A stretch of 64,000 nt of DNA from Phallusia mammillata (GCA_965637545.1 OZ281496.1:27652001-27716000); one strand, 5' to 3'. Positions 14,014 to 62,305 are shown, counted from the stretch's first letter. Notes: generated by a model not told the origin, from the sequence alone. Made by a program: numbers and translations.

Positions 14014-17000
14014 TCACAGAAAACTTGCAACAAGTGGCAAAGCCACAGTTATCCACAAGGCGGCGCTGTTGACACTTGCTGCAGAGGTCGTTGTCGTTGG
14101 CGCAGGAGTTGTGGTCACTAAAATCAAACAAGAAGGATCGACTGTAAATAAGCTGGAAGTTGATTTTTTTTCTGTCATGTAGCATTATTTGAATCTTTAA
14201 CCGAGAGAAAAAATTGCACAGTATCGATCACTTCATAGAAGTAATGAAACAAACCGGAAAACTTGGTAAGAAACAAGAAAAGTGCTAATTACAAAACGAT
14301 GTAATTGTAGGCTAATGCTGCAATGTAGGATATAATTTGTAGCCAAATGTGACATTGTTTGTAAGCCCAAAGTTTTCTTCATGCAAAAGTTATTCGTGTC
14401 AAATTGCCAGCTTTCAAATTGCCCTTCGTGTATGCAAATCACACCACACTCAAGTTATAAAACCTTCATACTTCGCGGGCTACTGTGTGTAATGATGCCC
14501 GCACAAGCAAATGCAGCTGATGCATTTTCGAATCACCAAAAATCGAAACATTCTTCTTACCACAGGAAGATCCCGTATCTGTTTGTCCAGCCGGGCAGCC
14601 GCAATTGAAGCTTCCAGGCGTGTTGGTACACGAAAGATGAGATGGTGTGCATGGGTTGTCAGCAGAACACTCGTCAATGTCTGTTAACAAACATTTTGGG
14701 TGCAACATACGTGTTATAAATAGATTGTAAACCAATAGATCTTGTTCGAAATATTACCCTTAGCCTGAGCCTTTTTTGTTTGTTTCTCGTTTATTACGCT
14801 TTAGCCACTGTTTAGTTTTAAATGCTCGTACGTCGTGAAACATGTTTGTTTCAAATTATCACACGAGATTCAGCGTAAAAAGATGATTTCAAAAATATTC
14901 AGATTTTGCTTACCGGAACAAGATTGGCCATTTCCTGTAAAACCCGTGTTACATGTGCATGAAAATGTTCCGGCTTGGTTAGCACAAGCGGCAAAGGTAT
15001 TACATGGAACAGGAGTTTGTGCGCATTCGTCAATATCTGTACATACAAAGATGCTGTTTTAAACCATACGCAAGTTCTATGGTTTTGAACTTAGATAAAA
15101 TCAATCAAACCTTTGAGATCTACGAAGCTACATTCATAAACGTTTATGAACTATGAAAAGGAAATGAAGAGGTTTAAAGACAAATTAGGCGAATGTTGTG
15201 CTGAGGTTTTATCGCTTTGACAAAAGAAAACATTGCAAAACACGTACCGAGTCGGTAATAGCTCCGCACAGGTTGAAAAGGTATAAAGTTAACAAAAAAA
15301 GTGGATGATACATCTGGTAGACTAGAGTTCGTGAGTTAAAAATATCAAGTTTGTGTGTAAAAAAACCTTCATAACAAATAAGCTTGGACACCTGTGCAAG
15401 TGAATCCATCCCCTGTATACCCCGATTGACAAATACATTGGAAAGATCCCGCAGTATTATTGCAGCTTGCCTGGACGTGGCAAGTCGTTGTAGCGCATTC
15501 ATCAATATCTGCAATGGTCACATGTGATAAAATATTAGTAACGATTCTCTTGTAAAAACCTGGTGTATGCCGCAGTAGAATACTATCTGGAACACTATAG
15601 CTATTAACGCTGTAGCATCCTGATCTCTACATGTTGTTTTTGTCATTGCTTTTTATGTTTTAAGGCAATTCTGACAATTTCTAAATAGGCTACGTTAACA
15701 TTGTGTCCACAGTCGTTGCGGATTATGATTTAGGATTATCTTGATCTCATTTAACAAGTTTGTGACATTAGTATAAATCCATCCTTTAGCCAAACGTTTT
15801 CTGCACTGGTAAATGTGTGGGCGGCCAGTCAAGGTTTGAACTCACAAACCAACGAACACACCACGTCGTAATTGTAATCGGCCAGTCAAGGTTTGAACTC
15901 ACAAACCAACGAACACACCACGTCGTAAATAATTGTAATAGCGCAATGCTGTTACAAAATACACTAGATCATATTACAAACACAAAATTAAACCCGCCTG
16001 GACAGTTAGTTCCTGTGGGTATCAAGTTATGTGGAGGGTAGGCCGTCGTACTAGAGGTTACATTGAAGCCTGCGTTGCACACGCATTGCGCAAGAGAGGC
16101 GGCTGGACTTGTACAAGCTGCGTTGGTGCCACATGGATTGAAAACCGTGTTGCAGGGGTTCGGAACTGGCAAAACAAAACATTTGAAAATATAAACGGCA
16201 ATTGAAGACAAACAAGTAATTATAATTGCGAATGATCAATTTTGTGACTATGGATATTATAACTACGGAACTATTAGGGCGGTTATAGATACGGTAATGC
16301 TAATACATATGTACAAATGTAAATACTTTCGTTTATACGATTTAGACTACATCACCTTGCTAGTCCCAAAAACTTAAGATTAAAAGTATGTTTGCTGTGA
16401 AATTGTCACAACAGCGAAACGCCATCCCACCCAATGTACCCTTCGCACTTAATTATCTCCAAAGTTATTGTTGGACGTAACATTATACTACCTTACGGTT
16501 ATTTGAGACATGAGAAGCTTGGGCCAACACAATAAGACCGTGACCTCTACATGCTGTCGGTTAATGGGCGATAATGAAACAAAACGTGTATTACATCATC
16601 TCATTATTACAACACCACTTCATACCTAGAGGTCATATGTCAAAAAATCCCCGAAATGCAGACAACTTTCCCTTAATGTCGTCATTTTCAACAGTATGGC
16701 GAAACCAAGTTAGAAAAAGAGATAGAATACACAATATTTTTTACCTCAGTCGCAGAGGTATTAGGACTAGACATATACTTGGTGATGTGGTCGCACCGTT
16801 TGGGTGCAGAAATCCTTTGTAAACGTTAATTTGCTAAAATAAAAAATTCGAGCACTCCAATACGTATTTGTCCACCTGTCGGTATCAATCTACTTGTGAC
16901 GCTACAGACAGCTGCTAAGTAAATACAGAGGACCAACGACAAAGCCACCACAAAAGAGCCACCACCAAAAGAGATAATGCCAGCAACAAGCGTCTATGTT

Positions 17001-17924
17001 TTGCACAAAAGGGTGAGGGCCTTTAAAACGTGTCATAATGGCGCAATCAGGAAGTGGCTTGCTATTGACAATGTGGTTCCTGTTTTGCGAAGAATTTTGA
17101 CTTGCAACAGCCAACTCAATTGTATTTAAGACTAACAATCTATGATTAGCACGTTTGACGAGTATTTGAGCCATATAAACGGCAGTTTGAAGCCTCAAAG
17201 TCGTATAAAACAGGGTTCTAATTTGGCTTTGATTGGTGTAATTATCTTTTTTTCTTATTAGTTTTGATTGTACCAAAATTGTTCACTACTAGGCCTAACA
17301 TGAAAAAAAAACTATTTTGAATTGCCACATAAGGTGTTAACTGTCAATCAAAATCAAACAGCAGCATAAACTTACTCGTTTGGGCAGAATTTCCACATGA
17401 AGTTAGGCTCAGCAAGGCGTCGTCGGCCACTGAACGGTTTTGATAGGCAAGTGTGCTTGTCATCAATACTGCTGGAGTATCCGTGCTTCCAGGAATATCA
17501 TGAGTTACGTTGTATACGACTAACACTAGAATAAAAACAAACGACCAACAGTAGCACATTTAAAGTTTCCAACCTACTGTTTGTACAATAGCAACAAACA
17601 AATTGGTACCAAAATTGACCTATTTCGACTTCAAATTGACTTTTAAAACAGTAAAAAAATATAAAAAAGACCAGCAAAAGAAGGTCGTGTAACCGACTCA
17701 AACACATTTACAAAAACAATCTAACTTGTCTTTCATACAACAAGTATGTAAGAGGTAGTATGTAAACAACAAAGTGTATCAGTCTCACAAAGTGCGCTTG
17801 TGGTTAAAAGACAAAGTGTTAAGGAAATGTTAAACATACCAGCATTCGCATCGTTTGCATTTGAAGGTTGTAAAGTTGTAAAGCAGAACACAATCACAAT
17901 TGCAAGGTACGTCACCACCTTCAT
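14014..17924 (-). CDS. Paralog E: secreted/GPI-type protein, signal peptide + head module + 4 EGF-like domains + Thr-rich stalk + hydrophobic tail (~288 aa)
   Basis: Exons 17840-17924 ([28 protein letters not shown]), 17376-17525, 15998-16165 (GC donor), 15392-15508, 14914-15036, 14561-14680, 14014-14117 ([34 protein letters not shown]). All junctions phase 1; total 867 nt. DIDEC...C-x-C cbEGF motifs. Confidence 0.85.
15822..15928. repeat. 57-bp tandem duplication in an E intron
   Basis: CGGCCAGTCAAGGTTTGAACTCACAAACCAACGAACACACCACGTCGTAA at 15822 and 15879. Confidence 0.92.
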
Positions 17925-18565: not shown

Positions 18566-18638
18566 GCCTGCGGTGGGATTCGAACCCACGACAGGAGTCT
18601 TTCCGGGACTCGCGCTCTACCAACTGAGCTACACAGGC
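18566..18638 (-). tRNA. tRNA-like cloverleaf (pseudo-tRNA or SINE head), nominal anticodon GGA
   Basis: GCCTGTG TA GCTC AGTTGGTA GAGC GC GAGTC CCGGAAA GACTC CTGTC GTGGG TTCGAAT CCCAC CGCAGGC. All four stems pair, A and B boxes are intact, and TTTTT follows. C33 instead of U33 and no long variable arm. Confidence 0.6.
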
Positions 18639-19185: not shown

Positions 19186-22100
19186 TCAGTAACATTCCGC
19201 ACAAAAAGGGACGAAAAACGCGTTTAAAGTTATCAAAAGAAACATAGACCCGATGTTGCATGTAGCAGAGTTACATTCAAAACCTCCAGGTTGATTTAGG
19301 CAAGTTTGATATCCTTCACAGTTGTGCTGATTCGTACAGCATTCGTCAACGTCTAAAATAGCAGTTATATAGGTTAATTTTCAATTTTGGCTTTCGTTAT
19401 CTGACTTCACATAGTTCTGTTCTATACACCGTTCTAAGACATCAAATCATCCTACAGGGCAAGGGATTTAGTCCCTTGACCAACCACTGTGGCTAGTAAA
19501 CGTTTTGCAAGGCTTTATTTCTTTCAGGAAAACTGTGACACTGTGCACAATATTCCATTTTGTCCATAGCGTACACAACACTACCTTTGTTTTTGCCTTT
19601 ATCGTTTAAACGGATCAGCAAGGTTACATAATTGTATGCGGTGAAAAGAGTCAGTAAAACATACTTTGCTTACATGGCATGCACGAAGGGATAAACGAGA
19701 GAAAAAGGGGTTTAAGAACTATTGCTTTGCCGTTAAAGCATTGGAAATTGGACAACTATGAACAAATTAAACATAGTGTTGTTCATACCTGAGCAGACCG
19801 TACCATTCTGTGAGTAGCCGGTCAAACAAGAGCAAGTAAAACTACCAGGTAAGTTGTTGCATTGAGCGTTTAAACCGCAAGGATCACTGGTTTCCAAACA
19901 TTCGTCGATATCTGAAAGGCAGAGGAATATCAGGAACTTAATGTGCTTTTATAGTTTGCAAAGCTAAAGAGATTTTCTTTCGAGCTTAGGGTAATTACAG
20001 AAGTGTATAAGGAAGTATAGGTTTCTTTGAAAGAGTGTTTGACAACTTGCAAAAGAACATAAAGCGCAATTAGAATACTCATCGTCCTATAAGATGAGTT
20101 TTAGTCGAAATTTGCTTTATAGAGCAGATACTAAAACAAAATGAAATGAAATTTTTTAGTCTTTAGAAATCATTTCAGTTTAGAACCCAAATAGTTGCGC
20201 CCGTGGTTAATATTTTAACTTGTACGCAAGAAGAACATCTTTATAACAGCGATGTCACCGAACACGCAGCATAATATACTTTAACGTACCTCGACAAGTG
20301 CTTCCAACAGCAACATGTCCGACAGAACAGCAATTGAAAGATCCCATTGTGTTTGCGCACAATTCGTCATTAGTACAATTATGAGCACCGGTTGAGCACT
20401 CGTTAAGATCTAAAACAACAAAAACAGCTTGGACACTGGAGAACGGAATAAAAAACGCTAAAAACAGAACCATACAGTACAGGTGACAAAATACAATACA
20501 ATACTGTCGTGGGTACGAATCCCACCACAGGCCATAGTAGTTATCTTATGCCGTGTCATATGGGAATGCTTGAGAGACCGCGGGCTTGTTTTGGTAATGG
20601 CCTCATATAGACCTTACGTGTTATGATTTATTACAACAAGGTGCCGCTATATAGTGAATTGTGTGTATAAATATAGTATGCATGCATACATGTCCCGGCT
20701 TTTTATAAATTTCTTAACATTCGGAAAATCTGCGCACCTTCGCAAAATTGCTCGCGCTGAGACACAGTATATCCAGAGGTGCAAAGGCAAACGGATCCGT
20801 TTTCCGTGCTTTTGCATCCAGGAAATCTTCTGCAGACACCTGAATCGCATTCGTCAACATCTACAAATGTAAAAACAACATATAGTTACTGTAAATGATA
20901 GTCAGTAACAGAAAAAAGAGCATATTTTCACTGAGAAAACAGAAGTCACAATGTTAAAAATTGAATCAGATTTGCGGTACTTGTGCTTAAAGCGGTCAGA
21001 TGCGAATTTTTGAACATTCGTATTTCACAAGTAGAGCCGTACTTAGAAAAAAATAAATACACTAATATGTTTTCATGTACAAATTTAAATGTTTACCTGC
21101 TTCCGAATCGATGACCGATGAAGTCCAAAATATGGCAAAGTTACAACAAAACACAAGGAGATATATCACTCCTCTCATTGCGAAGAAGTATCGCTTGACT
21201 TAATGTTCTGTAATCTGATATAGGAGAATACGGTACAACAAATTGATTAGTCAACTTTATACAGCCCTTCTCGTAATTGTTATTATGCCTGGCAGCAACA
21301 GCTTATCAATTGATTAGTCGGATGCGCTCTCAAAATAAAGCTAAAACATATTAATATTTTGGACTACAGCACTTTTTTTCAACTCGTCTACTCTTAAATG
21401 GTTACTGATTTATAGTATGTACAAATAACTCAATCTAATGAACAACTGATGCTTTCAATCTTCAAAAAAGTCATCAATTTTCATCACTTTCAAAATAGCA
21501 GTACCTTACTGATGATGGCATGAGCATTTGCCGAAACGTTTGATCAATAAAGCATGTCGCTTTTTACATCTATTTAGGCCGATATTTTCACCATTCAACT
21601 TATGAACAGATCCGTATATAGTGTCCCGCAGTTTATCTACTGATCTTTAGTTTGAGTACTTTAGTACTGCATACACTAAAAGTGTATACACTAACTCTGT
21701 GAGCTGGTTTCCGAACTACAGCTGCTCAAATGAGGTGCCTTAAACTTCGTGTAAAAACCTCTTTTGTACTAAATCGTGAACGAATCATGTTTATTTCATC
21801 CAGCTGTAACATTCGATCTCAAGCTAGCTATTAAAGTTATTTTGCAAGATGACGTCATACCACACATTTACATTCAAGAAAGCATATCAAAATAGTATAC
21901 CGTTTTAAACCTTGTTTTCAACTGAGTTTCATTTTGATTAAAAAGTTGTTTAAAAATAATCTTTTGATTTGAACCGGAATTAGGTGCGCCCCAGTTAAAT
22001 TGCGTTCGAGTCACGACATTTGGAAAGCAACAAGAGCTCCATTTTGAAATAAAAATTAATAGGTGTGTTAGCTTTGGCGCAGTATTGGTTGTCACCGAAC

Positions 22101-25100
22101 AATATAACCTGTTGTAGTAACACAAACAGACTCGAGACACATGTCAAAGTAATGCCCCATAGCAGATACCAAAGATTTATAAAACCTTCCGGAAACGCGC
22201 AACAAGCCAAAGAGAAACGCCACATGCAAACTTTCAGCTACTCAACACTAAGGCACTAGGCTAAGGAAAAACTACGCAATGTTTCTAGCGAGGTGAAATA
22301 GTAGAAGCAAAGTTATTAAACAACTATTCAATGCGGCGATTGGCGCGATGCCACTTGTACAACTGATATCTGGAAAACAAATAAACCTTTCTTACGAATA
22401 TATTAACAAAACAAGGCGGAAAGGCATCTAAAACCTGGTTAAGTTACATTGATTTAGCCCAGTGGTTCCCAAACATTTTTATATTTTTTTCAAAACGGTC
22501 CCTTTGCCATTATTTCGAGGGCTCGCGGTCCTTAAGCTTAAATGTGTATTTCATAAAAACGAAAGTTGATTGCAGGATTTTAGCTAGTTATGCAAAATTG
22601 CGCATAACAATCATCCAAAGACAGCATGTGACATCACAAACAAGACAAAAAACATTACGATTGTGCGCGAACAATTGCATTTTTAATAGTTGTCATTCAA
22701 TAAAGGCCATTGTTTAGCAATGGAGACAGTCGATTCACAATTCTACTTTGATTTAAACTTATTTAGTGGCACAAACTGACGCCAAATAAGATTATAGAAT
22801 TACTTCAGCTGCTTCGCGGTCCCCCCAAAAATGCCTCACGGTCCCCTAAAGGACCGCGGACCCCAGTTTGGGAACCGCTGATTTAGCCGGATAAAAAGAC
22901 ATCGGAATTCGGAATTAACATGACTGTACATAACTAAAAACAGGGCATTTTTGACATAAAGCCTGTTACGAGCCTAGTATTTCACAGTTTTATCATTTTG
23001 TTAATGTGGGTCAATCCTAACCCATTACACAGGCATTTGTTGTAAGAATGTGTGGCAAAGCAACCCTGCAATTCACATTGTCGGTCATTTAACTAAAATT
23101 TCCTGTATAATGCGGCTTTAAGAACACAAGATTTTATGCCATATTGAACATATATTTTGGAGGACGTAACAATGTAGATGGAAACAAAAATCTTGCGTAC
23201 CTGTGCACCATGTTCCGTTTCCAGCATATCCAGGATAAACACATTTACAAGAGAAACTACCGAGATGGTTAGTGCAAACTGCGTTAGTGTCGCAGTCATG
23301 ATTTCCGCTACTGCACTCGTTTATGTCTGCAAAATTCCATTAAGAAAAATTGGTTTGTATATCAATCACACAAATGTTAATGATAAAATTGTCAAAATAT
23401 TTCATTTAAACCTTTCAGTGTTCGTGTACATCAAATACATATATATATATAAGACCTAGTAGTTAAAGTAAAATACTAAGAAATAGACTCACTGTACAGG
23501 AAAACAGCAGGACAATAATCATGCTTGGTGCAATAACACAAGGCATATCTTATTAAGCATAACAAGAGCTATAGAGCTAAATAGTAATGCTGAATGAAAA
23601 CACCTGGCCCGTACATAGTCGTTTATGGCCTTACCAGTTTAACTGGCCACGGCTCGTATCATAATGTTAGGGAGACCTTATTCACCCAGCTAAGTCAAAT
23701 ATATCTTTACACGCTCACCTTCACATGTAAAGCCGTCCCCGGTAAATCCTTGGTTGCACACACACGACGTGTTACCGTTTACCGTTTCCATGGCAGCGTT
23801 CGCATGACACGAGGGAGCGGGTGTTGTGATTGCTGGAGCAGTTGGGCACTCCGAAAATACCTCTGAAAAGTAAAGAAGGTACATACATATGCTTTGGGTT
23901 GAGTTTCTATGATCCTAAATTTGTTGTGTACAAGTCTATTGCTTGTACAATTTTGGAATGTATGATATTTCAGTATTTTGCCATTGTATTCTATCGGTTA
24001 GGCAACAGTGTCCATGCAATTTCCCAAGAGTACAGCGTTGTAAGCAGGATTGGACTCGGCCAGAACCCATTTAAAAAACGTATTAGGCCCCTATGTTGGT
24101 GATATTACGACACAAACGACGTGAGTTTGAGGTTAAACTCGAATCAATCCCGCATTATTCAAGTCAAGTCCAAAACCGTACCTATTTACATGTAAAACCC
24201 TTGTAGAGAAGCAAAATTTAACAAACGTACTGTCAATGATAGCAGGGTAGTACAAAACACAAGTACAAAAAATATTTAGGCAAATACAAGTGTTAATATG
24301 GCAAACGTTGGTGTACTTACCAGAGCAGAAAGTACCGGTACCCCCAAACCCTGGATGTTTGCAGCGACAGAAAAATCCACCAGGATAATTTGTACATTCC
24401 GCCTCCAAGTGGCAGTTGTGAGTTAAATCGGTGCACTCATTCACATCTGTTAAGGACGTTACGTATTGTTAAAATGAAGGTAGCTCTCCAAACATAGGAA
24501 CTCACATCAGACAAAGCTTGCAAAATTATACACAGATATGACAGAGTGTAAAATCTGATATGGGCGAGTTTAAAATCATCTGAATCAAGCCCGTTTTTAT
24601 TAAACTTACGTCCGAACCCGACCAGAAACCCCCGGCCGAGTTACAGCTGTTGACTATAGTTTAGAGTTAATGAGTAAGAGGCAACACGAAATACGGCATA
24701 TACCTTCACATGTCGTTCCATCTCCAAAATAACCGTCCAGACATGCACAAAAGAAGCTGCCTACGGTGTTTGTGCATTCTGCCATCCGGTGACAAGATTC
24801 AGTCAGAGAACATTCATCAAAATCTGCACACATTTTAACAATTAGTTTAGTGTTTTTCTAACTAGGCGATGCGCATCCATGGATACGGTGGTGCAAAATG
24901 GTTGTTAGTGCAGCTGGTGATGAGAGATTGGCCTCATTGACTAGTGCTGGCATCCAACGGCACTCCAGTTTGTTGGGAGGCAAAAAAAAAAATTAAATAA
25001 GTAGGGTGTGCTTGCCAAACAGGATTGATAAAATTTAATACAAAATGTGACTTCATGAATTATCAACACTTTTATTTGGTTGCAGGACAATTAAAAAGAA

Positions 25101-38990: not shown

Positions 38991-39035
38991 CAGTGGTTCT
39001 CAACCGGGGCCCATGGCTCCCCAGGTTGGCCACTG
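38991..39035. mobile_element. Minimal hAT MITE remnant
   Basis: CAGTGGTTCTCAACC...GGTTGGCCACTG, 45 bp; no matching TSD. Confidence 0.4.
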
Positions 39036-39998: not shown

Positions 39999-40455
39999 CA
40001 GGGCTACTCAAACTTTCTTGCTCAGCGACCCCATTTTAGCACAGAAATTTCTACGAGACCCCTTGATGGGTATGCAAAGAAATACTTATATTTTAAATAC
40101 ATACCATTTAATGGCACCTAAAAAGTCTAAATTAATATCTAACTTGATACACAGTCTTAGTTTTTATGACGTCATAATCTCTGGTGTGACGCTTGTGTTA
40201 TCTGCCATTTTGCATTGTTTGCACTCAATAGGCATAAAAAAGTCTAGCGCATATGGTTGCTAGGCTTGTAATACTCTTTTTAAGTTCTACAAAATAAGTT
40301 TAGAGCAGTTTAAATAGACGGGAATGATGTTTAAACAATAAATGTACGCACGTATACCATTTACTGTGACTGACATAACCCATAATGTTTCGCGACCCCA
40401 AAATTTTATTACGCGACCTCAATTGGGGTCGCAACCCACAGTTTGAGAAGCCCTG
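39999..40455. mobile_element. hAT-type MITE in a C intron
   Basis: TIRs CAGGGCTACTCAAACT / AGTTTGAGAAGCCCTG; perfect TSD GCTTAGAT. Confidence 0.9.
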
Positions 40456-42170: not shown

Positions 42171-43223
42171 TCTTAACAAGGTTAACTTTATAACATATTG
42201 AATAGATTGTTGAGACAAATTAAAGCTCCTGTGTTCTGGGGAAAAAATCGGAGCGATTGTATTTTATAAGTCAACATACATATTAAAATGAATAAGGTCG
42301 GTTAGGTATTAATTCGTCAGTATTCGCGTTCGCTGTAGATTGAAGTGACATTGACGTTGGGGGAATTACGGGGTTATGTAAATTTATGAGTACAATTCCC
42401 ATCTGACGATGTTTTTTTAATAACACCAAAAACAGATCTAATAGTTAATTGTGGCTTCGTGATCTAAACATTTAAACGTGTGCAATACGATGTATTGTAT
42501 GCATGCGAACTCTCTGTCAGTTATGTTTCAGACAAAGCAATAGTCTCATTTTTATTTGGTACTCAATATTTATCAAAATTACCACTCATTCTCTCAATCA
42601 TTATATATTGGAAACTTGCGCATCAAACAATTTCATGGAGTTGATTTTACGAGTAACATGATACAAAAATTCACACAAATATGCACAACAAGTGTTGTAT
42701 GCCTTTTCCAAGCCCAATTGACAACGATAACGGGAGTTTTAAAGTCGATTAACATGCGAAAGATGTTTTTAAAACAGCTTTAGACAATAAGGATTATTTA
42801 TGTGAAAACAAAAGTTTGCATGTGCATGATGCGGTCCTAATACCAGGGCAAGTCATTGAAGGATGAAGCCTGGATGCCGTAGTAGAAAAGCTTGTGGTAG
42901 TCACCGAAATTGTTGACATAGCTGTGTTGGTATCTAAAATTGTTCAAGGCAAAATTTGAGGTATGCAGTGACAAAAAAAGCTGTTGTGAGCTAAAATGTT
43001 AGATCAATGTGAACAAAGTATGAAGGTTGTTTGACAGTAAATTGCTTTTTACAAAGATAAATAAACATGTTTTTTGTTTTGTTTACCTGCTGTTGTCTAG
43101 AAGGGCCTTTTGATGCTTTGTGTGTCTTCACGAAGTGGTAATGGATGTGGTTTGTTTGTGAAATAGCGAAGTTTTTTCCGAGTTGTTGTTGGGTTTCTTG
43201 CTTCTTGGTGTTTCGTATTGTTA

Positions 43224-52200: not shown

Positions 52201-54096
52201 GCTTGTTAACCAAACATGTATGATCTACTTACCAACACATGTCAATGGGTCCATGGTTCCGTTCACTTGGTAACCGGTGTCACAAGTACAAGTGTAAGAA
52301 CCGACGTTGTCGACGCAAGTTCCGTTTGGGCCACAATCGTAGCCGAAATCTGTGCACTCATTAAAATCTGTAGAATTGTTTTGCGTTAATTCAAAGTTTG
52401 AATCAACACATTTGATTTTTAAAATAGTTTTACTGAAACCAATTAAACCGAAACGCACAAAAAGTTTGCAACCGAATTTAATATGCGCTTTTTACATGAA
52501 ATAATAGAAACAGATAAAAAAGAAAGAAACTAACAACAAACGCATAGCGGTATAAGTTGTTTAAAGAATACGTACAATTATTTTACCAGTTTTGTCAAAA
52601 GAAGAATATGATATGTATGTGATGCCCTGGTGTACAAACGGTTATGTTTGATGAACACCACTTTGTTGCTTATTTAAACGTTTTTCCGGTGTTTGAAACG
52701 TTGTTTGGTTTATGAAATTCTAGGTAATGGCCTATCTTGATTCGTTTCTACGTTTCAGTAGTTCCAAATCTGTGGCATTTAAGTTTTCTTTCCTTCTTTT
52801 CCCGCTGGCCCTTTGTTCAACAATGGCAAAGCAAACTACTGTTGTTGATTTTTAGCCTTACTTCCACATGACAATCCATCCCCAGTGAATCCAACATCGC
52901 AAGCACAAGTGAAAGATGGGTCGGTGTTAGTACAAGTAGCATTGGCGTGACAGTTGTTCAATGTTGCGTTGGCGCATTCGTTAATGTCTACAATGACAAA
53001 AGCCATCAGTTCATGAATTGTGTAAACAAAAGTGGCAAACGCCCTACTTACCAACGCAAACCTTAGCTGAATCAAGTTCGTAACCCGAGTAACAGGTGCA
53101 TGTGTAAGTTCCAGGAGAGTTGGTGCATGAAGCAGTTTGCGGGCCGCATACTGTAGCGTTTCTAACGCATTCGTCAATATCTGGAAAATATTATCAAGAG
53201 AAATACGCGTAACAATTAATTCATGAAATGTTTCTCGTACCCGTGCATGTTGTTCCTGATGGCACGAGTGCAGTGGTAAACGTGGTTGTGCTCATGTCGT
53301 CAAAACCAGAATTACATGTGCATTGTACCATTGAGGTATCAAAATTGGTGCATGTGGAGTCGTTGGCGCAAGGGTGGAGTGTCGTAGAGCAAACGTCGGT
53401 CACTGTAATAATTTCGTTTTGGATTATTATACGGGCTCAAACAGTAGTAAAAGGCGACATGCTAAATGATTTATATAACTAAGTCATTGCTCCTATCACA
53501 TTCTTCCTTAGCACGAGATGACTGCACAATATCTTGCAATTTTTATTGAATATAGGTTCAGAGTGAAAAATGTTTTGATTTCACTTAAGCAAAAAAAGAT
53601 ACTTACAGTTTTTGGCGTTACCACCAGCCAGTATGGCGCCCAGCGCATTCATGGCGATTGTAGAGTTTACGTAGGTTACAGTTTCAACAGTTTCGGTCGT
53701 AATGTTTCCTCCGAGACCATCCGATACGCTTCGTGTGAGATTGTACACAACGATAACTGTAAAAAATAATTGCGATGAAGTGAAGTGGATTCAACAAAAG
53801 CACAGCATTTCGGTTGTTGTATTTTAAACGATAGTCTTTTGCAGATTCTGATCCGAATCGATTGGAACGTTCAGTTTTAGATCGCAAACATTTGCGCTTC
53901 AAAACTAGTTAATATATAACAAAGCATTTTATAACTCAAACTTACTTCAGGTGTTATTTACATAAAACTGCATTCGCATGTAGCAATTAGGAAAAAATAC
54001 AAAAACATGCTTACCCGCATTTGTGTCAATTGTCTGAGCTGAGACGCAGCTAATCAAGGTCGCAGCGAATAAGGCGAGAAAAATCGTTGACTTCAT
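43224..54096 (-). CDS. Paralog B: signal peptide + head + 24 EGF-like + 2 SEA-like + ZP-N-like; last exons uncertain
   Basis: Exons 54015-54096 ([27 protein letters not shown]), 53607-53756, 53241-53402, 53052-53180, 52862-52987, 52233-52367, 51929-52051, 51648-51782, 51327-51464, 50736-50864, 50550-50675, 50159-50281, 49902-50021, 49682-49764, 49129-49345, 48844-48981, 48520-48648, 48335-48460, 48001-48135, 47581-47703, 47297-47419, 47042-47161, 46695-46777, 46327-46543, 45951-46091, 45535-45710, 44869-45136, 44631-44765, 44293-44421, 44089-44214, 43593-43715; frame continuous. Candidate last exon 43224-43330 is tentative. Confidence 0.85.
44990..45710 (-). other. ZP-N-like domain in B
   Basis: [58 protein letters not shown]|[36 protein letters not shown]: four Cys with ZP-N-like spacing, ~100 aa; assigned by eye. 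Confidence 0.6.
46327..46777 (-). other. SEA-like domain 2 in B
   Basis: 83-nt + 217-nt exon pair ([17 protein letters not shown]...[41 protein letters not shown]). Confidence 0.6.
47852..47911. repeat. 30-bp perfect tandem duplication in a B intron
   Basis: TTAAATGTTATTGCATTTTTGTCCAGGTTA x2. Confidence 0.95.
48288..50870 (-). repeat. Internal duplication in B: 48288-48655 matches 50510-50870
   Basis: Two EGF exons, their 59-60-nt intron and the flanks are nearly identical. Also 50080-50340 matches 51835-52110. Confidence 0.9.
49129..49764 (-). other. SEA-like domain 1 in B
   Basis: 83-nt + 217-nt exon pair homologous to A ([16 protein letters not shown]...[41 protein letters not shown]). 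Confidence 0.6.
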
Positions 54097-54235
54097 AATC
54101 TTTGTTGAGCTTTTGTTTGTTGTGTGTCAGTTTCATTTAGAGAAAATGTTCGAGCTTAGTTGAGCTTTTAGCGTTAACAGCTCTCTGGATTAAAGAGGAG
54201 CACTGGCAAAAAAATACTGCGTTAACTATGTAGAT

Positions 54236-55819: not shown

Positions 55820-58800
55820 TTAAAAAACGTTCGTCAAAATACTGATAAATCCTAGCGCTAAAGTTAATTGGATTCTTCCCAACAAAAGTAGTCTCGTTGC
55901 GGTGTTGCTACTTTCTGTGGTTGTTGCAATCGTAGATGTGATAGTAGTGGTTGATAGAGTAGGAGTAATTGTTGCACTTGTGCCTAAAAAACCCGTTGTT
56001 GACCTGCTGCCACTTCTTTTGTGTGACAATAAACACTGACGGTTCTATAACCCACAGATATTTAAGATCTTTTTAGACCTAAAAAGTCTACAAGAAATGT
56101 GGATCCTTCATTTTGAAGCGCTGTTTTGATAAGCATTGTTGTTTAAAATCCATGTTAAATTAAAGAAACGGTATTGAAATGACATAACAAAGGCTTGTGG
56201 GACATTCAGTGCAACGCCTTCTTTTGTTGAAACATAACTATGGTTTTGTTTGTGTTACTTTGCGTGTGGTAAAGTGAGGCATTTTCGCAAAATATTTACC
56301 TTCACAAAACGTCCCATTTCCACTGAATCCAGCCATACATGTGCAACTAAAACTTCCTTCGCTATTCATGCAATCTGCGTTCTGATGGCACGTTCCGTCT
56401 AACGCACATTCATTGTTGTCTGAGAAAAAGTGTGATTTTAAAGTAAAGAGAGGATTGACTTTGAGCACGAAATATATTGTATTCAACGCGTTACTTATTT
56501 GTATAATTTGCAAATTTAATCAATGAGACAATGTCAACGCCAAATGTCATTGATTTCAATTGAATGGTTTAGTAGTTTATCAGTCCCAATAGCAACGATT
56601 TATTGTATTTGATCAAATTGCTTAAGGGTTGGTGTTCTTACCGGTACAGGTTTTTGGGTCAACGGCTTCGTTTACTTGAAAACCGGTGTCACAGGTGCAA
56701 GTATATGAACCGACGTTATCAAGACAAACTCCGTTCGGACCACAATCGTATCCGAATTCGACGCATTCATTAAAATCTGTAAACGTGATACATGTTGCTT
56801 TGATTCGCAATTACGCCTTCAATGGGTCTGGCGTATTATGACTTATCGATGAGTATGCCGTAATCGCTGGTCTGCATGGAATGGTGACAGCAGTATTGGA
56901 TGTATTCATTTTAGTTGTTGGTTTGGATTTACAATTTGCAATATAATGAGTGCAAAAAATGATCAGTGTCGAAAGTAACCTGGTTATATGACAGTCGTCT
57001 TATTTTCACCTGTACAAGTGACACCATCGCCAGTGTATCCAGTGTTACAGGAGCATATAAAGCTTCCATTTGTGTTGGTGCACATTGCTGATGCTGAGCA
57101 GTTGCCGTAATTATTGGTACACTCCGAAAAATCTGCACATAAAGCGAGAGTAATGGAGCGATATTTTGCATAAAGTGTAAAAAGTGAACAATGTCGAAAG
57201 TAACCTGGGGATGTGGCCTTCGTTTTTAGTTATTTTTGTTTATTTTCATCTGTGTTCTAAATCGAAAATAAGGCGATAGTAATAGAGCGAATGATTATTT
57301 GCCCACATTTTGATTTAGTACTGGACTTTTTGCTCAGTTACAAAGTTCGCACCATCACCAGTAAGCGATCCACCGTCAATCATTATAGCTGATCCTGTAT
57401 GATCCCTGAGAAGTGCGGTAAATTCGTCCGCAGTGTGGGAAGTTTGATTGAAAGCAAGTAGTACGATGATTTCACTCGGTGTGCCGCTGGTTACACGTTC
57501 AACAGTGGCGATTACAGTGTGGTAAAAGAGGGAGTTGGCGTTCATAATTTCGTCCATAAAATCTTCTATCTAGTTATACAAAAAGTCGTTTCTTCAAGTC
57601 AGTTTCATTGATTTCAGATTTAAACTGTTGCTAACTTTGTTCTAAATTTTCGACATTTACATTTTTTGCACTAAAGCAGTGTTTTTTTAACCTATTTTGG
57701 GCTCGTACTTGAGCTTTCATAAAATTTTCTCGTACCCCTTGTCTACAATTGTCGACGGAAGTAAATAAAATTATAATAATAGGAATTAAACTCAGTGTAT
57801 TTATAACTTGGGTGTTAGAAGCATACATGAAAACAGTGTTGAAAGTAGTACAAAAATAACCCGTTCTAGTAATATAACAAAGTGACTTGTTACGCATTCT
57901 TTACAAATATGTCTAAATACCATATAACTTCATGTCGTGCCCCCTGCTTTAATGCTTTGTACCCCCGAGGGGTACACATAACGTTTTATTCGGCCTATCT
58001 GTTTTGACTTGGTACCGTTTAGTTGGCAGCATGATGAATTTTCTTCTTGAGCAATTGTCATGCACCACTTACCGCATTCTCAATAACGGCACTTGATGAT
58101 GTTACTGCAGTTGAAACTGAGATCACGGCGCGGTAGTCATATTCCAGTCGCACAGCTAAAATATAACAAATTCAAATAGGCTTTTTCATGACATTGCTTT
58201 ATATTCCAAGGTGTGTCGTATTTGCTGGTCTGCATGGACGCTTTAGAACAGTGGTTTTTAACCTATGGTACGCCGCAGCTTCTCGGGTGGTACGCGCGAA
58301 GCTTTCTATTAAACTTAATTAAGTCAGTTGTGAAATTGTAGCTTCACTGACCCAACTGATCAGTGTTTGGACATTCTTCTGAAATTGCTAACATTGCTAA
58401 CTTTGCTGGTTTCATAAATATGCTAGTCTGGTCCTGAAAAAATAGGCCTCTTGGTCCGAATCATTGGTTTAGGTGGTACACCGGGACAAAAAAAGTCGGC
58501 AGGTAGTAGGCCTCAGGTTAAGGACCCCTGCTTTGAAACAAATCCATACTTGTACCTTATCTAAGATCCCATTCCGTGCTAGTTTTATACATGCCAATCA
58601 TGTGACAGTTGACGAAACAACGGTTGTTGCTGTGTAACCAGAGTGACAGTTCCAGATGCCTTTCTGACATGTTCAAGCCAGAGTTGATAGTCGGGCCGGA
58701 CTTTTCTGGCCGGATTCGGGCCGGTTTCGGGCTTAGGTTTTTTCAAACAAAACGGGCTTGATTCGGGCCTGACTTTACACTCGGTGTCAATATTTAAAAA

Positions 58801-61800
58801 AATGTACTGTTTTTAACTGGTTAATGGCCTGTTGCTGGACACCTAAAGTCAAACAGCCCTCAAAAGCCTTGTTCGAGACCAATTGTCTATTGTGTTAGTT
58901 GTCTTGGTCTTTTCGGCCTGTCAATCAAACTTTCTGGCCTTGTCAATCAAACAAAAAACGATTCGGGTTCGTCCTTGGTTTCGGGCTTGCATTGTCGGGT
59001 TCGGGTGGGGTACGGCCTCCAATTTCAGGCCCGTTTGGAACTCCGGTTCAAACCACTAGCCACAATGTACAGGTGTAAAGTCCCCATTGTTTTCATTGGA
59101 CTGTTGCGTTACCACAATCATGTTTTTGAAAAGCACTGACCCTCGCAAGAGATGCCGTTTCCGGTAAAACCATTGTCACACGAACAATCGAAGCTTCCAG
59201 GGTTGTTGGTGCATGTTGCGTTGGCATGACAACCGTGTGCTCCAGCGCATTCGTCAATATCTGTGAAACAACGAGTGACGTTGTGGATTTAACATGGTTT
59301 TGTCGAAGTATCGTATCAATATTAAAGATAGATCCATGGTTGAAGCTCAATGTTGTTGGCTGGCCGACAAACAACATAGCCTATGTCAGGGATTCACATC
59401 CTTGGTACATAATTTTGTCAAAAGCAAATAAAAACATTAGACTATGGACCGCAGACATATGTGTCATTAGTTGATGCGGACGCATTGGTCTGCTAAGCAA
59501 CTCGGCGGGCCGCGCAACCTTTGTTGAATCGCGTTAAACCCGCGGGCAATAAGTTGTACACCTTTGGCCTACGCCATATGCTATCAAAACGGTTGGTACA
59601 ATCTCGGTTCTGCCGGCCATTCTTAAACTCTTTTTTGTGATAAGAATAGCTAAATTTTGACTTAAGAAAGCTGTTACTTGGTACATTATGTTGTTGAATT
59701 ACAATATATTTCTAACATTTTTTGTTTCAAGACGGCATTTCTAACAGTCTAAGCAAGTCACAATGTTATAGACCGTACACGGCTACAAAACAAAACATAA
59801 AATAAACCATTGTGGCTACAACTGGTGTTTTCGTGTTTTTGTGTGATTTCATGTTTTCCCCAATCGCTTAATTTGTTTATAGATGACCGAACCGCGCCAT
59901 ACGTCAAGTGCCGGTTTTTAATTCTTTAAGTTTTTGTTTCAATTTGCACATTCGTTGATTATATTCGATATATACCATTGCATAAAAATATACAAGTTGC
60001 TTGTGGCTTTTTTTGTAACGACGCACTTTTGCCACCTATAGTTAAAAAGATTTTACCTGTGCAAGTCATTCCATCCCCCGAGTAGCCAGTGTAGCAGGCG
60101 CATGTGAAACCCCCAAGTGTGTTGGTGCAAATTGCGTTCGTATCACAAGTGTGAGCTCCAGTTATGCATTCATCGAAGTCTGAATAATTAGAAAACTTGT
60201 GGTTGATAGGTAACAATCGTACTACACTGCATTAAATATCGAAAGACAGAGCGTTTATCTGCACGCTTTCCTTTGAATCGTGAAAAAATTTTTTGTTAAC
60301 AAATCAAAACTGGATTGTGCGTTTATCTAAAAACGTTTATCTACTTACCAACACATGTCAATGGGTCCATGGTTCCGTTAACTTGGTAACCCGCGTTACA
60401 GGTACAGGTGTAAGAGCCAATGTTGTCGACGCAAGTGCCATTTGGACCACAATCGTATCCGAAATCTACGCACTCGTTAATATCTGAAAAAGTGGTTTAA
60501 AGAATTCGTCAGACAATTGTTTTTTGCGCATTTGGTGGTTTGTTGAGATGTGCTTGTAGGCTAGCTATATATCTCAACGTTGGGTCTTCTTTTTTACGTT
60601 ATTATTTATAAATATTGTCTAGTTAAATATGATTGCAAGAAATATTACATAAAAAAAATTGTGAAGTAACATTGTAAGAAAGTGGCATTTGTCTTCATCA
60701 GCCGATGTAACATCTTGCTGTAAAATTGATACTTTACCTGCACAATTTACTCCATCACCAGTAAAACCTGCATCACAAGCGCAAGTAAAAGATGGGTCGG
60801 TGTTGGTGCAAGTAGCATTGACGTGACAGTTGTTCAATGTGGCGTTGGCGCATTCGTTAATATCTGAAACGACAAAAGCCAACAGTTCATATTTTGATGC
60901 TTCATGCAAACAAAAGGGCAATGCAAAACTTACCAGCGCAAACCTTAGCTGAATTAAGTTCGTAATCCGTATTGCAGGTACATGTGTAGGTTCCAGGAGA
61001 GTTGGTGCACGAAGCAGTTTGCGGGCCGCATACTGTAGTGTTTCCCGCACATTCGTCAATATCTGAAAAATATCATTGAGCGGTTTTAGGCTTAAAAAGG
61101 TAACAGAAGTATTTTACTACAGTATTTAAATTTCCTGTGGAATTTGTTTTTTTTTAGTAGGAATATGCGTATTTGTTTAATTTTTTCGTGTTTGTTTAAG
61201 GTTGTTATAATAAGGCCTATACTGGTTATTAAAATCCTTTGGTATATTTTTTTATACGCCGTCGTTTTCTTCATAAAAAAATCGCATCTATCTTACCCGT
61301 GCATGTTGTTCCCGATGGCACGAGTGTAGTGGTAAACGTGGATGTGCTCGAATCGCTGAAACCAGGGTCACATGTGCATTGTACCATCGAGGTATCAAGA
61401 TTGGTGCATGTGGCGTCGTTGGCGCAAGGGTGGAATGTCGTAGAGCAAACGTCGGTCACTGTAATATATTCGTCTTTGATTTATATATAGGCTTAAACAG
61501 TAGTAAAAGGTTGCATGCTAAATTATTTACAAACTAGTTTCATTGGAGTAAAAAAGGTACTTACAGTTTGTGGAATCTCCACGAGCCAGAAGGGCTTGTA
61601 GGGCATTTGTGGCGATTGAGAAGTTTGTGTAGGCGACAGTTCTAACCTCTTTGGTTATAATGAAGCCTCCAAGACCATCCGGTGTGCTTAGTGTGTGGTT
61701 GTACACAACGATAACTTCAAATAATTATTAAAAAAAATAAGTGAAGGTAAACCAACAAAACGCACAGCGTTTTATTTATTTATCTGTTCTTGTCGTTGTA

Positions 61801-62305
61801 TAAACCAGTGGTTCTCAAACTTTTTTTTTTTTTGCGACACCTCTGGAAAAGTTTCTTTGACTTGCGACGCACCAGCAAACAAAAGTTAATGAGGAAACTT
61901 ATTATTAAAGTTGTGTTGATTGATACAGCAACAAAAAGCCACGAAACGAAACTATTCTGCGACGCCCTTGTAAAATTGTAACGACGCACCAGGGCTTCGC
62001 GATGCACAGTTTGAGAACTAACTGCTATAAATGATAGTCGCTCACAGATCTATTAATTGGAACGTTTAGTTTTTGGATGAACGCTGACGAACATTCGCGC
62101 TACAAAACTAGTTGGAATATAAATACAAAAATCAGTGTTTCATAAATTAACTCTACAGTAGGTTTTGTTCATATATCGCCGCTCTTTTACATAACAATTA
62201 GGAATATGAACAACAAACATGCCTACCCGCATTCGTTTCAATCTGAGCTGAGACGCAGCTTATCAAGGCCGCACCGAACAAGGCGATGAAAATCATAGAC
62301 TTCAT
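55820..62305 (-). CDS. Paralog A: signal peptide + head + 9 EGF-like + SEA-like + Thr-rich stalk + hydrophobic tail (~621 aa)
   Basis: Exons 62227-62305 ([26 protein letters not shown]), 61565-61714, 61297-61458, 60934-61062, 60738-60863, 60349-60483, 60057-60179, 59141-59260, 58073-58155, 57353-57569, 57010-57132, 56642-56776, 56300-56419, 55820-55983 ([54 protein letters not shown]). Sum 1866 nt, divisible by 3. Confidence 0.88.
57353..58155 (-). other. SEA-like domain in A (two exons, phase 1-0-1)
   Basis: [28 protein letters not shown]|[72 protein letters not shown]. Alternating strand/helix pattern of ~100 aa fits SEA; assigned by eye. Confidence 0.6.
57677..57990. mobile_element. Truncated hAT-type MITE
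   Basis: Left end CAGTGTTTTTTTAACCT and GTACCCC...GGGGTAC subterminal palindrome; right TIR not found. Confidence 0.5.
58249..58530. mobile_element. hAT-type MITE in an A intron
   Basis: CAGTGGTTTTTAACCT / AGGTTAAGGACCCCTG; TSD CTTTAGAA versus CTTTGAAA (6/8). Confidence 0.7.
58679..59045. mobile_element. MITE with CGGGC(C/T)-rich subterminal repeats
   Basis: Ends CAGAGTTG...GGGCC / GGCCCG...GAACTCCG; TSD GTTCAAGC versus GTTCAAAC (7/8). A related fragment (GAATCAAGCCCGTTTT) lies at ~24575-24640. Confidence 0.7.
61806..62024. mobile_element. hAT-type MITE in intron 1 of A
   Basis: CAGTGGTTCTCAAACT / AGTTTGAGAACTAACTG; TSD GTATAAAC versus CTATAAAT (6/8). Confidence 0.75.

What the first reader, a model, noticed from the sequence alone, without database searches (positions are those of the whole stretch)
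14014..62305. Six-gene tandem cluster of modular, probably GPI-anchored EGF-stalk surface proteins of very different lengths
Seen: six co-oriented genes, each with its own signal-peptide exon ending in (N/H)A plus a phase-1 junction. EGF counts are 4 (E), 21 (D), 3 (F), ~10 (C), 24 (B) and 9 (A), with SEA-like and ZP-N-like modules mixed in differently. Almost every exon is a phase 1-1 cassette, so modules can be gained, lost or skipped in frame. Established: EGF/SEA/ZP combinations typify uromodulin, UMODL1 and the ascidian vitelline-coat protein HrVC70 implicated in self/non-self recognition. Inference: a birth-and-death family presenting a variable head at different heights above the membrane, a candidate recognition system (gamete, allorecognition or mucosal). 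It lacks the TB, NL, DSL or ZP-C domains that would make it fibrillin, Notch or uromodulin.
Basis: partly seen in the sequence, partly recalled or inferred. Interest (0 to 1): 0.85.

Follow-up and report, generated by a model that had tools for sequence, protein, structure and literature searches.

The report
Sea-squirt EGF-rod surface protein genes
A sea-squirt chromosome carries a row of seven related genes (part of a family of about 17) for sugar-coated, rod-like surface or secreted proteins made of 3 to 24 calcium-binding EGF beads with a fast-changing tip; the family is real and I found no description of it, but nothing yet shows what it binds.

Summary

Corrections:
- "Gene D" contains a terminal exon with a stop and, 1.1 kb on, a further family-type signal exon. 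The stretch therefore holds seven units (A, B, C, F, D1, D2, E).
- Gene C lacks the head exon and has three damaged exons, so it is probably decaying.
- A GPI-type hydrophobic C-terminus is present in A, D1, D2 and E only. B would be secreted, and F's 3' end is unresolved.
- The "ZP-N-like" label has three weak but concordant supports. "SEA-like" is only compatible with the data (an alpha/beta sandwich). Pfam recognises neither.

The window is part of a ~185-kb cluster: 12 family-specific EGF0 exons on this chromosome and 2 elsewhere. Other first readers flagged the same cluster in neighbouring windows.

The N-terminal head exon evolves at dN/dS 0.8-2.0 against 0.19-0.41 for adjacent EGFs, but not significantly above 1.

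No RNA, polymorphism or orthology data could be obtained, so a recognition role remains a hypothesis. Verdict: a lineage-specific modular surface-glycoprotein family, a new variant of a known kind.

The parts
55820..62305 (-). Gene A. Signal, head, EGF0, cbEGF types a b c d b, alpha/beta module, cbEGF d c b, Ser/Thr stalk with hydrophobic tail (14 exons).
42794..54096 (-). Gene B. Signal, head, EGF0, 23 cbEGF, two alpha/beta modules, one ZP-N-like module, Ser/Thr terminal exon without a hydrophobic tail.
37265..41599 (-). Gene C, probably decaying. Signal exon, no head exon, EGF0 with a frame-breaking deletion, 8 intact cbEGF plus 2 type-b EGF exons with indels, polar tail.
33304..36129 (-). 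Gene F. Signal, divergent alpha/beta module, cbEGF e, ZP-N-like module, EGF g, EGF f. The 3' end is unresolved (read-through gives a stop after 2 codons).
22272..30713 (-).
19186..21178 (-).
14014..17924 (-). Gene E. Signal, head, EGF0 (GC at the donor), cbEGF d l m, Ser/Thr stalk with hydrophobic tail.
62227..62305 (-). Signal-peptide exon of A (ends ...ETNA, phase-1 donor).
54015..54096 (-). Signal-peptide exon of B.
41521..41599 (-). Signal-peptide exon of C.
36051..36129 (-). Signal-peptide exon of F (ends ...SHA).
30632..30713 (-). Signal-peptide exon of D1.
21097..21178 (-). Signal-peptide exon of D2 (ends ...IDSEA).
17840..17924 (-). Signal-peptide exon of E.
61565..61714 (-). Head exon of A (49 aa, starts IVVYN-x-T, no Pfam match, fast-evolving).
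53607..53756 (-). Head exon of B.
30242..30400 (-). Head exon of D1 (52 aa).
17376..17525 (-). Head exon of E.
61297..61458 (-). EGF0 exon of A: a non-calcium EGF with a Ser/Thr-rich loop before the sixth Cys. This is the family signature exon.
53241..53402 (-). EGF0 exon of B.
29771..29941 (-). EGF0 exon of D1.
15999..16165 (-). EGF0 exon of E (approximate 3' border, GC at the homologous donor).
58073..58155 (-). Alpha/beta (SEA-class?) module of A, exon 1 (phase 1 to 0).
57353..57569 (-). Alpha/beta module of A, exon 2 (phase 0 to 1).
49129..49764 (-). First alpha/beta module of B (exons 49764-49682 and 49345-49129).
46327..46777 (-). Second alpha/beta module of B (exons 46777-46695 and 46543-46327).
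35159..35601 (-). Divergent alpha/beta module of F (exons 35601-35501 and 35369-35159).
45535..45710 (-). ZP-N-like module of B, exon 1 (Cys 1-3, phase 1 to 0).
44869..45136 (-). ZP-N-like module of B, exon 2 (Cys 4), fused to a type-b EGF (phase 0 to 1).
34150..34325 (-). ZP-N-like module of F, exon 1.
33842..33987 (-). ZP-N-like module of F, exon 2 (phase 0 to 2). The next EGF exon, 33727-33597, restores phase 1.
55820..55983 (-). Terminal exon of A: Ser/Thr stalk plus a 17-residue uncharged hydrophobic end (GPI-type).
42794..42933 (-). Terminal exon of B: Ser/Thr stalk and a polar end (no anchor signal).
22272..22369 (-). Terminal exon of D1: hydrophobic end followed by a stop.
19186..19352 (-). 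Terminal exon of D2: truncated EGF plus a hydrophobic end.
14014..14117 (-). Terminal exon of E: Thr/Pro/Ser stalk plus a hydrophobic end (GPI-type).

Best explanation
WHAT IT IS
The stretch is one part of a ~185-kb tandem cluster of a gene family for which no relative outside this genome was detected, in a sea squirt (ascidian). On the minus strand it holds seven co-oriented units: A, B, C, F, D1, D2 and E. Each unit starts with its own signal-peptide exon.

WHAT THE SEQUENCE SHOWS
- In A, B, D1 and E the mature protein begins with a 49-52-residue N-glycosylated head.
- The head is followed by a non-calcium EGF with a Ser/Thr loop (EGF0).
- Next come 3 to 23 calcium-binding EGF domains, one per symmetric phase 1-1 exon.
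- Some members insert a ~100-residue alpha/beta module and/or a ~105-residue four-Cys module of ZP-N type. Each of these is a two-exon block that is 1-1 as a whole.
- A, D1, D2 and E end in a hydrophobic peptide with no cytoplasmic tail. B ends in a polar tail.

WHAT IS INFERRED
- The cbEGF array forms a calcium-stiffened, heavily N- and O-glycosylated rod, of roughly 10 to 70 nm depending on the member.
- The rod is held on the cell surface by a GPI anchor in A, D1, D2 and E, or released in B.
- The N-terminal head, and perhaps the inserted modules, is the binding end.

HOW IT EVOLVES
The family grows and shrinks by duplication, loss and shuffling of in-frame exon cassettes. The EGFs are under purifying selection and the head evolves at about the neutral rate.

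MOST LIKELY ROLE
Pericellular adhesion or recognition glycoproteins. Partner and tissue are unknown.
For: - Strand-exclusive EGF array with canonical phase 1-1 splice borders.
- Pfam EGF_CA hits and calcium-binding / hydroxylation consensus in 56-57 of 62 exons. There are 79 N-glycosylation sequons, and 31 EGFs carry the O-fucose consensus C2-x4-S/T-C3.
- Seven homologous signal exons.
- Terminal exons that stay in frame with the preceding EGF. Mean hydropathy of the last 17 residues is 1.6-2.0 in A, D1, D2 and E, against 0.07 in B and -0.7 in C.
- Intergenic spacers of 1.1-2.2 kb, including the one between D1 and D2.
- The family extends over C3:27.668-27.852 Mb with 12 EGF0 copies, plus 2 on C1.
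- Recurring EGF types in a fixed order, and intragenic duplications at 86-87% identity.
- Head dN/dS 0.8-2.0 against 0.19-0.41 for five neighbouring exons at similar dS. The odds ratio for non-synonymous versus synonymous changes is 2.2-6.1 in all ten pairs.
- ZP-N-like module: atlas features next to ZP-N / CUT_N clusters (0.92), and the top Foldseek hits are ZP2, ZP3 and UMOD ZP-N domains.
- Alpha/beta module: helix-strand-strand-helix on the large exon. The top VIA hit is the SEA-fold IA-2 ectodomain, and the MUC16-type SEA domain is also listed.
Against:
- Pfam SEA, ZP-N and ZP models do not hit the cluster.
- Both structure models are of single exons at low confidence (pLDDT 66 and 57), and all fold matches are below significance.
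- GPI signals were judged by eye, without a predictor.
- Head dN/dS is not significantly above 1.
- C is damaged, F has no resolved 3' end, and E needs a GC donor.
- Symmetric phases would allow read-through fusions between neighbouring genes.
Confidence: 0.7

Rival explanations
1. The family is a structural or barrier component, such as a mucin-like glycocalyx, tunic matrix or basal matrix, rather than a recognition system. Under this reading the cbEGF rods and Ser/Thr stalks build a hydrated coat, and the head changes fast only because it is weakly constrained.
For: - Head dN/dS is about 1 and not significantly higher.
- Glycosylation potential is heavy: 79 N-glycosylation sequons and Ser/Thr stalks.
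- EGF-SEA-EGF cassettes occur in membrane mucins (my own knowledge) and in the nematode attachment protein MUA-3.
- Other tandem surface-protein clusters in this genome show the same fast-head pattern without proof of selection.
Against: - Eight head positions, including two N-glycosylation sequons, are invariant across seven copies. The head is therefore a folded, used part and not a spacer.
- Large differences in length and frequent cassette turnover are unusual for a matrix building block.
Confidence: 0.3
2. The family works in gamete interaction, either as egg-coat or follicle-cell proteins or as GPI-anchored sperm-surface proteins. That would be analogous to HrVC70/CiVC57 or to the sea-urchin 63-kD sperm protein.
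For: - The layout signal / EGFs / SEA-class module / GPI-type tail matches the sea-urchin 63-kD GPI-anchored sperm protein.
- EGF arrays plus ZP elements typify the ascidian vitelline-coat proteins.
- Half of the EGFs carry the O-fucose consensus, and fucosyl glycans mediate ascidian sperm binding.
- The tip evolves fast.
Against: - There is no ZP-C, no transmembrane helix and no vWF domain, so the genes are not VC70/VC57 family members.
- There is no expression data at all.
- Homology to the sea-urchin protein was not tested.
Confidence: 0.2
3. The units are not separate genes. Long read-through transcripts run through several of them and use the symmetric exons, with the signal and terminal exons skipped or used alternatively. 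In particular D1 and D2 form one gene.
For: - All junctions are phase 1, so the last D1 EGF exon (w23326-23201) could splice in frame to w20860.
- The Botryllus fuhc locus shows splice variants that link two neighbouring genes.
Against: - Every unit has an ATG-initiated hydrophobic first exon of conserved design and, where resolved, a terminal exon with a stop.
- The spacers are 1.1-2.2 kb, and a tRNA-Ser gene lies between D2 and E.
Confidence: 0.08

Closest known systems
Sea-urchin 63-kD sperm flagellar membrane protein (Mendoza et al. 1993, PMC2119707; its SEA module is noted in PMC2150771)
   Same: Signal peptide, calcium-binding EGF domains, a SEA-class module and a GPI anchor. This is the same overall layout as gene A, and it was itself described as related to uromodulin.
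   Different: It is a single-copy 470-residue protein with few EGFs. It has no head/EGF0 unit, no ZP-N-like module and no tandem family. Sequence homology to the present genes was not tested.
Ascidian vitelline-coat proteins HrVC120/HrVC70 and CiVC57 (PMC9265791)
   Same: Ascidian secreted proteins with 12-24 EGF repeats encoded exon by exon, with a ZP element, polymorphic, and implicated in sperm binding and self/non-self discrimination.
   Different: Those proteins carry a complete ZP domain and a transmembrane helix, and CiVC57 also has a vWF domain. Here there is no ZP-C, no TM and no vWF. The EGFs here are of the calcium-binding type, and some members end in a GPI-type signal.
Uromodulin / UMODL1 (vertebrates)
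   Same: EGF (partly calcium-binding) plus ZP-N, GPI-anchored. UMODL1 adds SEA. Uromodulin ZP-N structures are among the best fold matches of the ZP-N-like exon.
   Different: Uromodulin polymerises through a full ZP-N/ZP-C module with a consensus cleavage site, and no ZP-C exists here. The domain order and EGF number differ. The UMODL1 architecture is recalled from my own knowledge.
C. elegans MUA-3 / MUP-4 (PMC2150771)
   Same: Very long EGF arrays (52 in MUA-3) interrupted by SEA modules in an extracellular rod.
   Different: They are transmembrane proteins with LDLa and vWFA modules and an intermediate-filament-binding tail. They are single genes with a mechanical attachment role.
Fibrillin / fibulin / LTBP cbEGF arrays
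   Same: Tandem calcium-binding EGF domains with the hydroxylation consensus, each on a phase 1-1 exon, forming rigid rods (established knowledge).
   Different: No TB (8-Cys) or fibulin-type C-terminal module is present. The proteins are small and many members are membrane-tethered.
Botryllus fuhc-sec (PMC3691228)
   Same: An ascidian secreted EGF-containing polymorphic protein. Its locus was first read as one gene and later split in two, which parallels D1/D2.
   Different: It has only two EGF domains, a different architecture and no GPI signal. No homology was tested.

Membership tests
Calcium-binding EGF (Pfam EGF_CA, PF07645) | Six-Cys EGF with N-terminal D/N-x-D/N-E-C and C-x-D/N-x4-F/Y-x-C. 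| tested here: met
   Pfam EGF_CA E=1.7e-9 and 3.8e-9 on single exons. 56 of 62 and 57 of 62 exons carry the two motifs.
SEA domain (PF01390) | Match to the SEA profile. | tested here: not met
   No hit on single exons at E up to 10. No hit in the cluster in a genome-wide six-frame scan. A profile search of PDB sequences found no SEA domain.
SEA domain (PF01390) | Beta-alpha-beta-beta-alpha-beta sandwich of about 100-120 residues. | tested here: inconclusive
SEA domain (PF01390) | G/SVVV autoproteolysis motif between strands 2 and 3. | tested here: not met
   The corresponding loop reads G-T-x-S-E-I-I-V or variants. A non-cleaving SEA is not excluded.
ZP-N domain (PF23344) | Match to the ZP-N profile. 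| tested here: not met
   No Pfam hit on the exons. None of the 19 genome-wide ZP-N hits lies in the cluster. hhalign against genuine ZP-N first exons of this genome is weak: E 0.019, probability 2.5%.
ZP-N domain (PF23344) | About 100 residues, four conserved Cys, immunoglobulin-like beta sandwich. | tested here: inconclusive
   The two-exon unit has four Cys in about 105 residues, and its intron lies where genuine ZP-N genes of this genome are also split. Atlas features sit next to ZP-N/CUT_N clusters at 0.92. The first-exon model is beta-rich at pLDDT 57, and its best PDB matches are ZP2-N1, ZP3 and UMOD ZP-N, with E about 1 and TM up to 0.57.
ZP-module proteins (uromodulin, VC70/VC57, egg-coat ZPs) | A ZP-C half following ZP-N, with a cleavage site and a membrane anchor. 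| tested here: not met
   None of the more than 150 genome-wide PF00100 hits lies in C3:27.65-27.87 Mb. In B and F the ZP-N-like unit is followed directly by EGF exons.
Fibrillin/LTBP; Notch and its DSL ligands | TB (8-Cys) domains; LNR or DSL modules. | tested here: not met
   An inventory of all Cys-rich open segments on the coding strand leaves only off-frame or intronic noise outside the EGF and ZP-N-like exons. No HMM scan for these models was run.
GPI-anchored proteins | An N-terminal signal peptide plus a C-terminal hydrophobic peptide, with no cytoplasmic tail, preceded by small residues. | tested here: inconclusive
   Present by inspection in A, D1, D2 and E and absent in B and C. F is unresolved. 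No GPI predictor was available.
GPI-anchored proteins | Release from membranes by PI-PLC. | not testable with these tools
   This is a bench experiment.

The most novel reading that the evidence does not exclude
The cluster is a polymorphic self/non-self or species-specific gamete recognition system of ascidians. In this reading the fast-evolving N-terminal head provides specificity. Stalk length (4 to 24 EGFs), optional ZP-N-like and SEA-class modules, and anchored versus secreted forms tune where the head is presented. That would make it a third kind of ascidian recognition locus beside Themis and VC70.
Probability: 0.1. Interest if true: 0.8.

Novelty: new variant of a known kind. Interest (0 to 1): 0.45.

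Why it matters
Ascidians are the closest invertebrate relatives of vertebrates and rely on germline-encoded surface molecules for self-sterility and innate recognition. Only a few such loci are known (Themis, VC70, fuhc).

This cluster adds a well-delimited family that I did not find described. It combines domain types seen in uromodulin, egg-coat proteins and the sea-urchin GPI sperm protein, in a new arrangement.

It is also a clean natural example of protein-length and domain-content evolution by symmetric (phase 1-1) exon cassettes. It shows internal block duplications, a gene pair that could easily be read as one gene, a decaying copy, and anchored and secreted versions side by side.

If expression proves to be gamete- or blood-cell-specific and the head polymorphic, the locus would become a testable recognition candidate. 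If not, it is one more lineage-specific glycocalyx family in a genome that has many.

Tried and rejected
1. RNA evidence. No run recorded as RNA holds the locus. Local scripts on the closed machine kept reading the whole window file.
2. An exhaustive HMMER search of 1.84 billion representative proteins with the large module exon gave only two bacterial repeat proteins at E about 1e-4. Pfam shows these to be unrelated (CHU_C/SprB, Calx-beta), and I rejected them as chance hits.
3. Pfam on all non-EGF exons gave nothing. Profile searches of PDB sequences gave nothing.
4. I tested whether the head exon is a half copy of the alpha/beta module. hhalign finds no relation, so this idea is rejected.
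5. I looked for intron-less copies of the modules that could be folded whole. None exists.
6. Foldseek and the atlas structure search of the module exon gave only generic ferredoxin-like folds.
7. I searched for a hydrophobic tail in another frame or a further exon of B, C and F. None was found.
All searches were run exon by exon, by reference.
9. The search for homologous proteins was not used. Its length window (0.55-1.75 times a 50-70-residue exon) cannot see full-length relatives.
10. Literature searches for an ascidian EGF/SEA/GPI family found no description.

Full report
**Observation**

The window is AT-rich animal DNA with no gaps. A strict six-cysteine EGF pattern occurs 62 times, and every match is on the minus strand. 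A splice-aware scan shows that each core sits on its own exon with a polypyrimidine-AG acceptor and a GT donor, in phase 1 at both ends. Exon lengths are 117-141 nt and always a multiple of three. The split first codon usually gives the Asp of D-x-D/N-E-C.

Pfam calls these exons EGF_CA and EGF_3. Of the 62 exons, 56 start x-D/N-E-C and 57 carry the Asp/Asn hydroxylation consensus. 31 carry the O-fucose consensus C2-x4-S/T-C3, and there are 79 N-glycosylation sequons.

**Gene units**

They share one design: M-K/R, a hydrophobic core, (I/V/N)-D-x-(N/H)-A, then a phase-1 donor.

A scan for all such mini-exons found a seventh at w21178-21097, ending ...IDSEA with a GTAAAC donor. That exon has a strong acceptor, is in frame with the preceding EGF, and encodes a hydrophobic end followed by a stop. 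The 1.1-kb spacer equals the other intergenic spacers of the cluster (1.1-2.2 kb).

I therefore read D as two units. D1 has 17 EGFs. D2 has 4 EGFs and no head or EGF0. Because all junctions are phase 1, a D1-D2 read-through splice would stay in frame and cannot be excluded. The Botryllus fuhc locus is a precedent: two tightly linked genes first taken as one, with linking splice variants.

**Architecture**

In A, B, D1 and E the signal exon is followed by three parts:
- A 49-52-residue head exon that starts (I/L/F)VVYN-x-T and has no Pfam match.
- A family-specific EGF0 exon, a non-calcium EGF with a Ser/Thr-rich loop before the sixth Cys (EGF_3, E=1e-6).
- The array of calcium-binding EGFs.

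The EGF exons fall into recurrent sequence types with a fixed order, where M is a non-EGF module and an asterisk marks a damaged exon:

| Unit | Order of EGF types and modules |
|---|---|
| A | a b c d b [M] d c b |
| B | a b c d c e a b d b [M] e a b c d d b [M] e [ZP-N-like] b c a b f |
| C | a b* c d c a b* a b f |
| F | [M] e [ZP-N-like] g f |
| D1 | a h c d d d d d d b i h d j (five-Cys EGF) d |
| D2 | k (atypical) l (truncated) |
| E | d l m |

**The non-EGF modules**

M is a unit of about 100 residues on two exons (83 + 217 nt). The exons are separated by a phase-0 intron with a conserved strong donor, so the unit as a whole is a 1-1 cassette. The ZP-N-like unit is built the same way. 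In B it is 176 nt plus an exon fused to a type-b EGF. In F three exons of phases 1-0, 0-2 and 2-1 sum to a multiple of three.

What is M?
- Pfam, a profile search of PDB sequences and an exhaustive HMMER search of 1.84 billion representative proteins gave nothing. The two bacterial hits are chance.
- The 70-residue exon folds as helix-strand-strand-helix at pLDDT 66.
- M is therefore an alpha/beta sandwich that is compatible with SEA, but it is not shown to be SEA. The classical G/SVVV cleavage motif is absent.

For the ZP-N-like unit:
- Pfam is silent and hhalign to genuine ZP-N exons of this genome is weak.
- Three leads nevertheless agree. The unit has four Cys in about 105 residues, with an intron where genuine ZP-N genes of this genome are also split. 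Language-model features sit next to ZP-N and cuticlin-N clusters at 0.92. The best PDB matches of the first-exon model are ZP2-N1, ZP3 and uromodulin ZP-N domains, with TM up to 0.57.
- I rate ZP-N at about 75% and SEA at about 55%.
- No ZP-C, TB, LNR or DSL module is present.

**C-termini**

A, D1, D2 and E end in a hydrophobic peptide with no cytoplasmic tail. In A and E it follows a Ser/Thr(-Pro) stalk and is preceded by small residues, which is the form of a GPI-attachment signal.

B's terminal exon is homologous to A's stalk but ends polar. C's is similar and also weak. For F no stalk or tail exon was found, and read-through after its last EGF stops after two codons. "Probably GPI-anchored" therefore holds for four of seven units and rests on inspection only.

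**Integrity**

- C lacks the head exon. Its EGF0 has a frame-breaking internal deletion, and two type-b EGF exons carry indels. One of these is a +1 in a T7 run, which could be an assembly error. C is probably decaying, although skipping the bad exons would keep the frame.
- E's EGF0 has GC at the donor.
- A, B, D1 and D2 read through cleanly.

**Family and evolution**

The window is G000:C3:27,652,001-27,716,000. The family-specific EGF0 exon occurs 12 times on C3 between 27.668 and 27.852 Mb, on both strands, and twice on C1. Head, M and ZP-N-like exons recur in the same interval. Counting the units without EGF0, the family has about 17 members.

Other first readers flagged the same cluster in adjacent windows. 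Follow-up agents' reports on other loci of this genome call it a sea squirt, probably Phallusia mammillata.

B contains block duplications at 86-87% DNA identity, and B and C share 650-1000-nt stretches that include introns.

I compared five close paralogues: A, B and three genes outside the window.
- The head exon is 51-65% identical to A, against 75-93% for the signal, EGF0 and EGF a-d exons.
- Nei-Gojobori dN/dS is 0.8-2.0 for the head and 0.19-0.41 for the five adjacent exons, at similar dS.
- The excess of replacement changes appears in all ten pairs, which are not independent, with odds ratios of 2.2-6.1.
- A bootstrap shows dN above dS only marginally, and in one pair only.
- Eight head positions, including two N-glycosylation sequons, are invariant across seven copies. 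The exon is therefore in use, but relaxed constraint and diversifying selection cannot be told apart.
- Other clusters in this genome show the same pattern, and earlier follow-ups reached the same cautious verdict.

**Mechanism**

Shown:
- Secretory signal exons.
- Arrays of calcium-binding EGFs with the full calcium-binding consensus.
- Dense glycosylation motifs.
- Anchored-type and polar C-termini.
- The cassette structure of the exons.

Inferred from established knowledge of cbEGF arrays (fibrillin, roughly 3 nm per domain):
- A stiff rod of roughly 10 nm (D2, E) to 70 nm (B) that carries the head at its far end.
- GPI tethering in A, D1, D2 and E, and secretion of B.

What the proteins bind is unknown. 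I commit to pericellular adhesion or recognition glycoproteins as the most likely role. The main rival is a structural or glycocalyx role. A gamete-specific role is the most interesting sub-case.

**Comparison with known families**

The closest described layout is the sea-urchin 63-kD sperm flagellar protein: signal, EGFs, a SEA module and a GPI anchor shown by PI-PLC release.

The ascidian vitelline-coat proteins HrVC120/VC70 and CiVC57 share EGF arrays and a ZP element, but they have a full ZP domain and a transmembrane helix. The present genes fail that membership test. MUA-3 shares EGF arrays interrupted by SEA modules, but it is a transmembrane attachment protein. Uromodulin and UMODL1 share the domain types but need ZP-C. 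I found no paper that describes this family.

**Limits**

- No RNA evidence was obtained.
- No allelic data were obtained.
- Full-length homology searches and whole-domain folds were left out, because joined models were not to be submitted.

**Verdict**

This is a real, large, modular family of surface or secreted glycoproteins, with no relative detected outside this genome. It is a new variant of a known kind, and a recognition function is possible but untested.

Noticed in passing
window 7649-9985 (+ strand): A 778-codon open frame on the opposite strand. It holds 21 tandem copies of an 81-nt unit (7712-9416, 85% matches) that encode Pro-rich nonapeptides (PPPETVSLV / PPPDTGSLV / PPPNSESPV). 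A unique acidic C-terminal part follows, with a stop at 9985. This is a separate gene of unknown function.
   Followed up: partly
window 18564-18639 (- strand): A tRNA-Ser (anticodon GGA) gene lies in the spacer between D2 and E.
   Followed up: no
G000:C5:7,786,000-7,824,000 (- strand): Two giant open frames (2295 and 5606 codons) made of EGF-like repeats of about 39 residues, hit weakly and repeatedly by the EGF0 probe. This looks like an intron-poor mega-repeat gene.
   Followed up: no
G000:C1:6,534,337-6,534,817 (+) and C1:6,685,884-6,686,358 (-): Two family members (head plus EGF0 exons, about 50% identity) lie on another chromosome, outside the main cluster.
   Followed up: no
window 55029-55265 and 41924-42172 (- strand): The spacers upstream of the B and C signal exons are homologous to each other, so the duplication unit included the intergenic or promoter region.
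   Followed up: partly
G000:C6:3.93-4.00 Mb: At least seven tandem genuine ZP-N / ZP-C hits on one strand: a separate tandem array of true ZP-module genes.
   Followed up: no
window 15999-16000 (E, EGF0 donor): The position homologous to the GT donor of the other EGF0 exons reads GC. This is either a rare GC-AG intron or a splice defect in gene E.
   Followed up: partly
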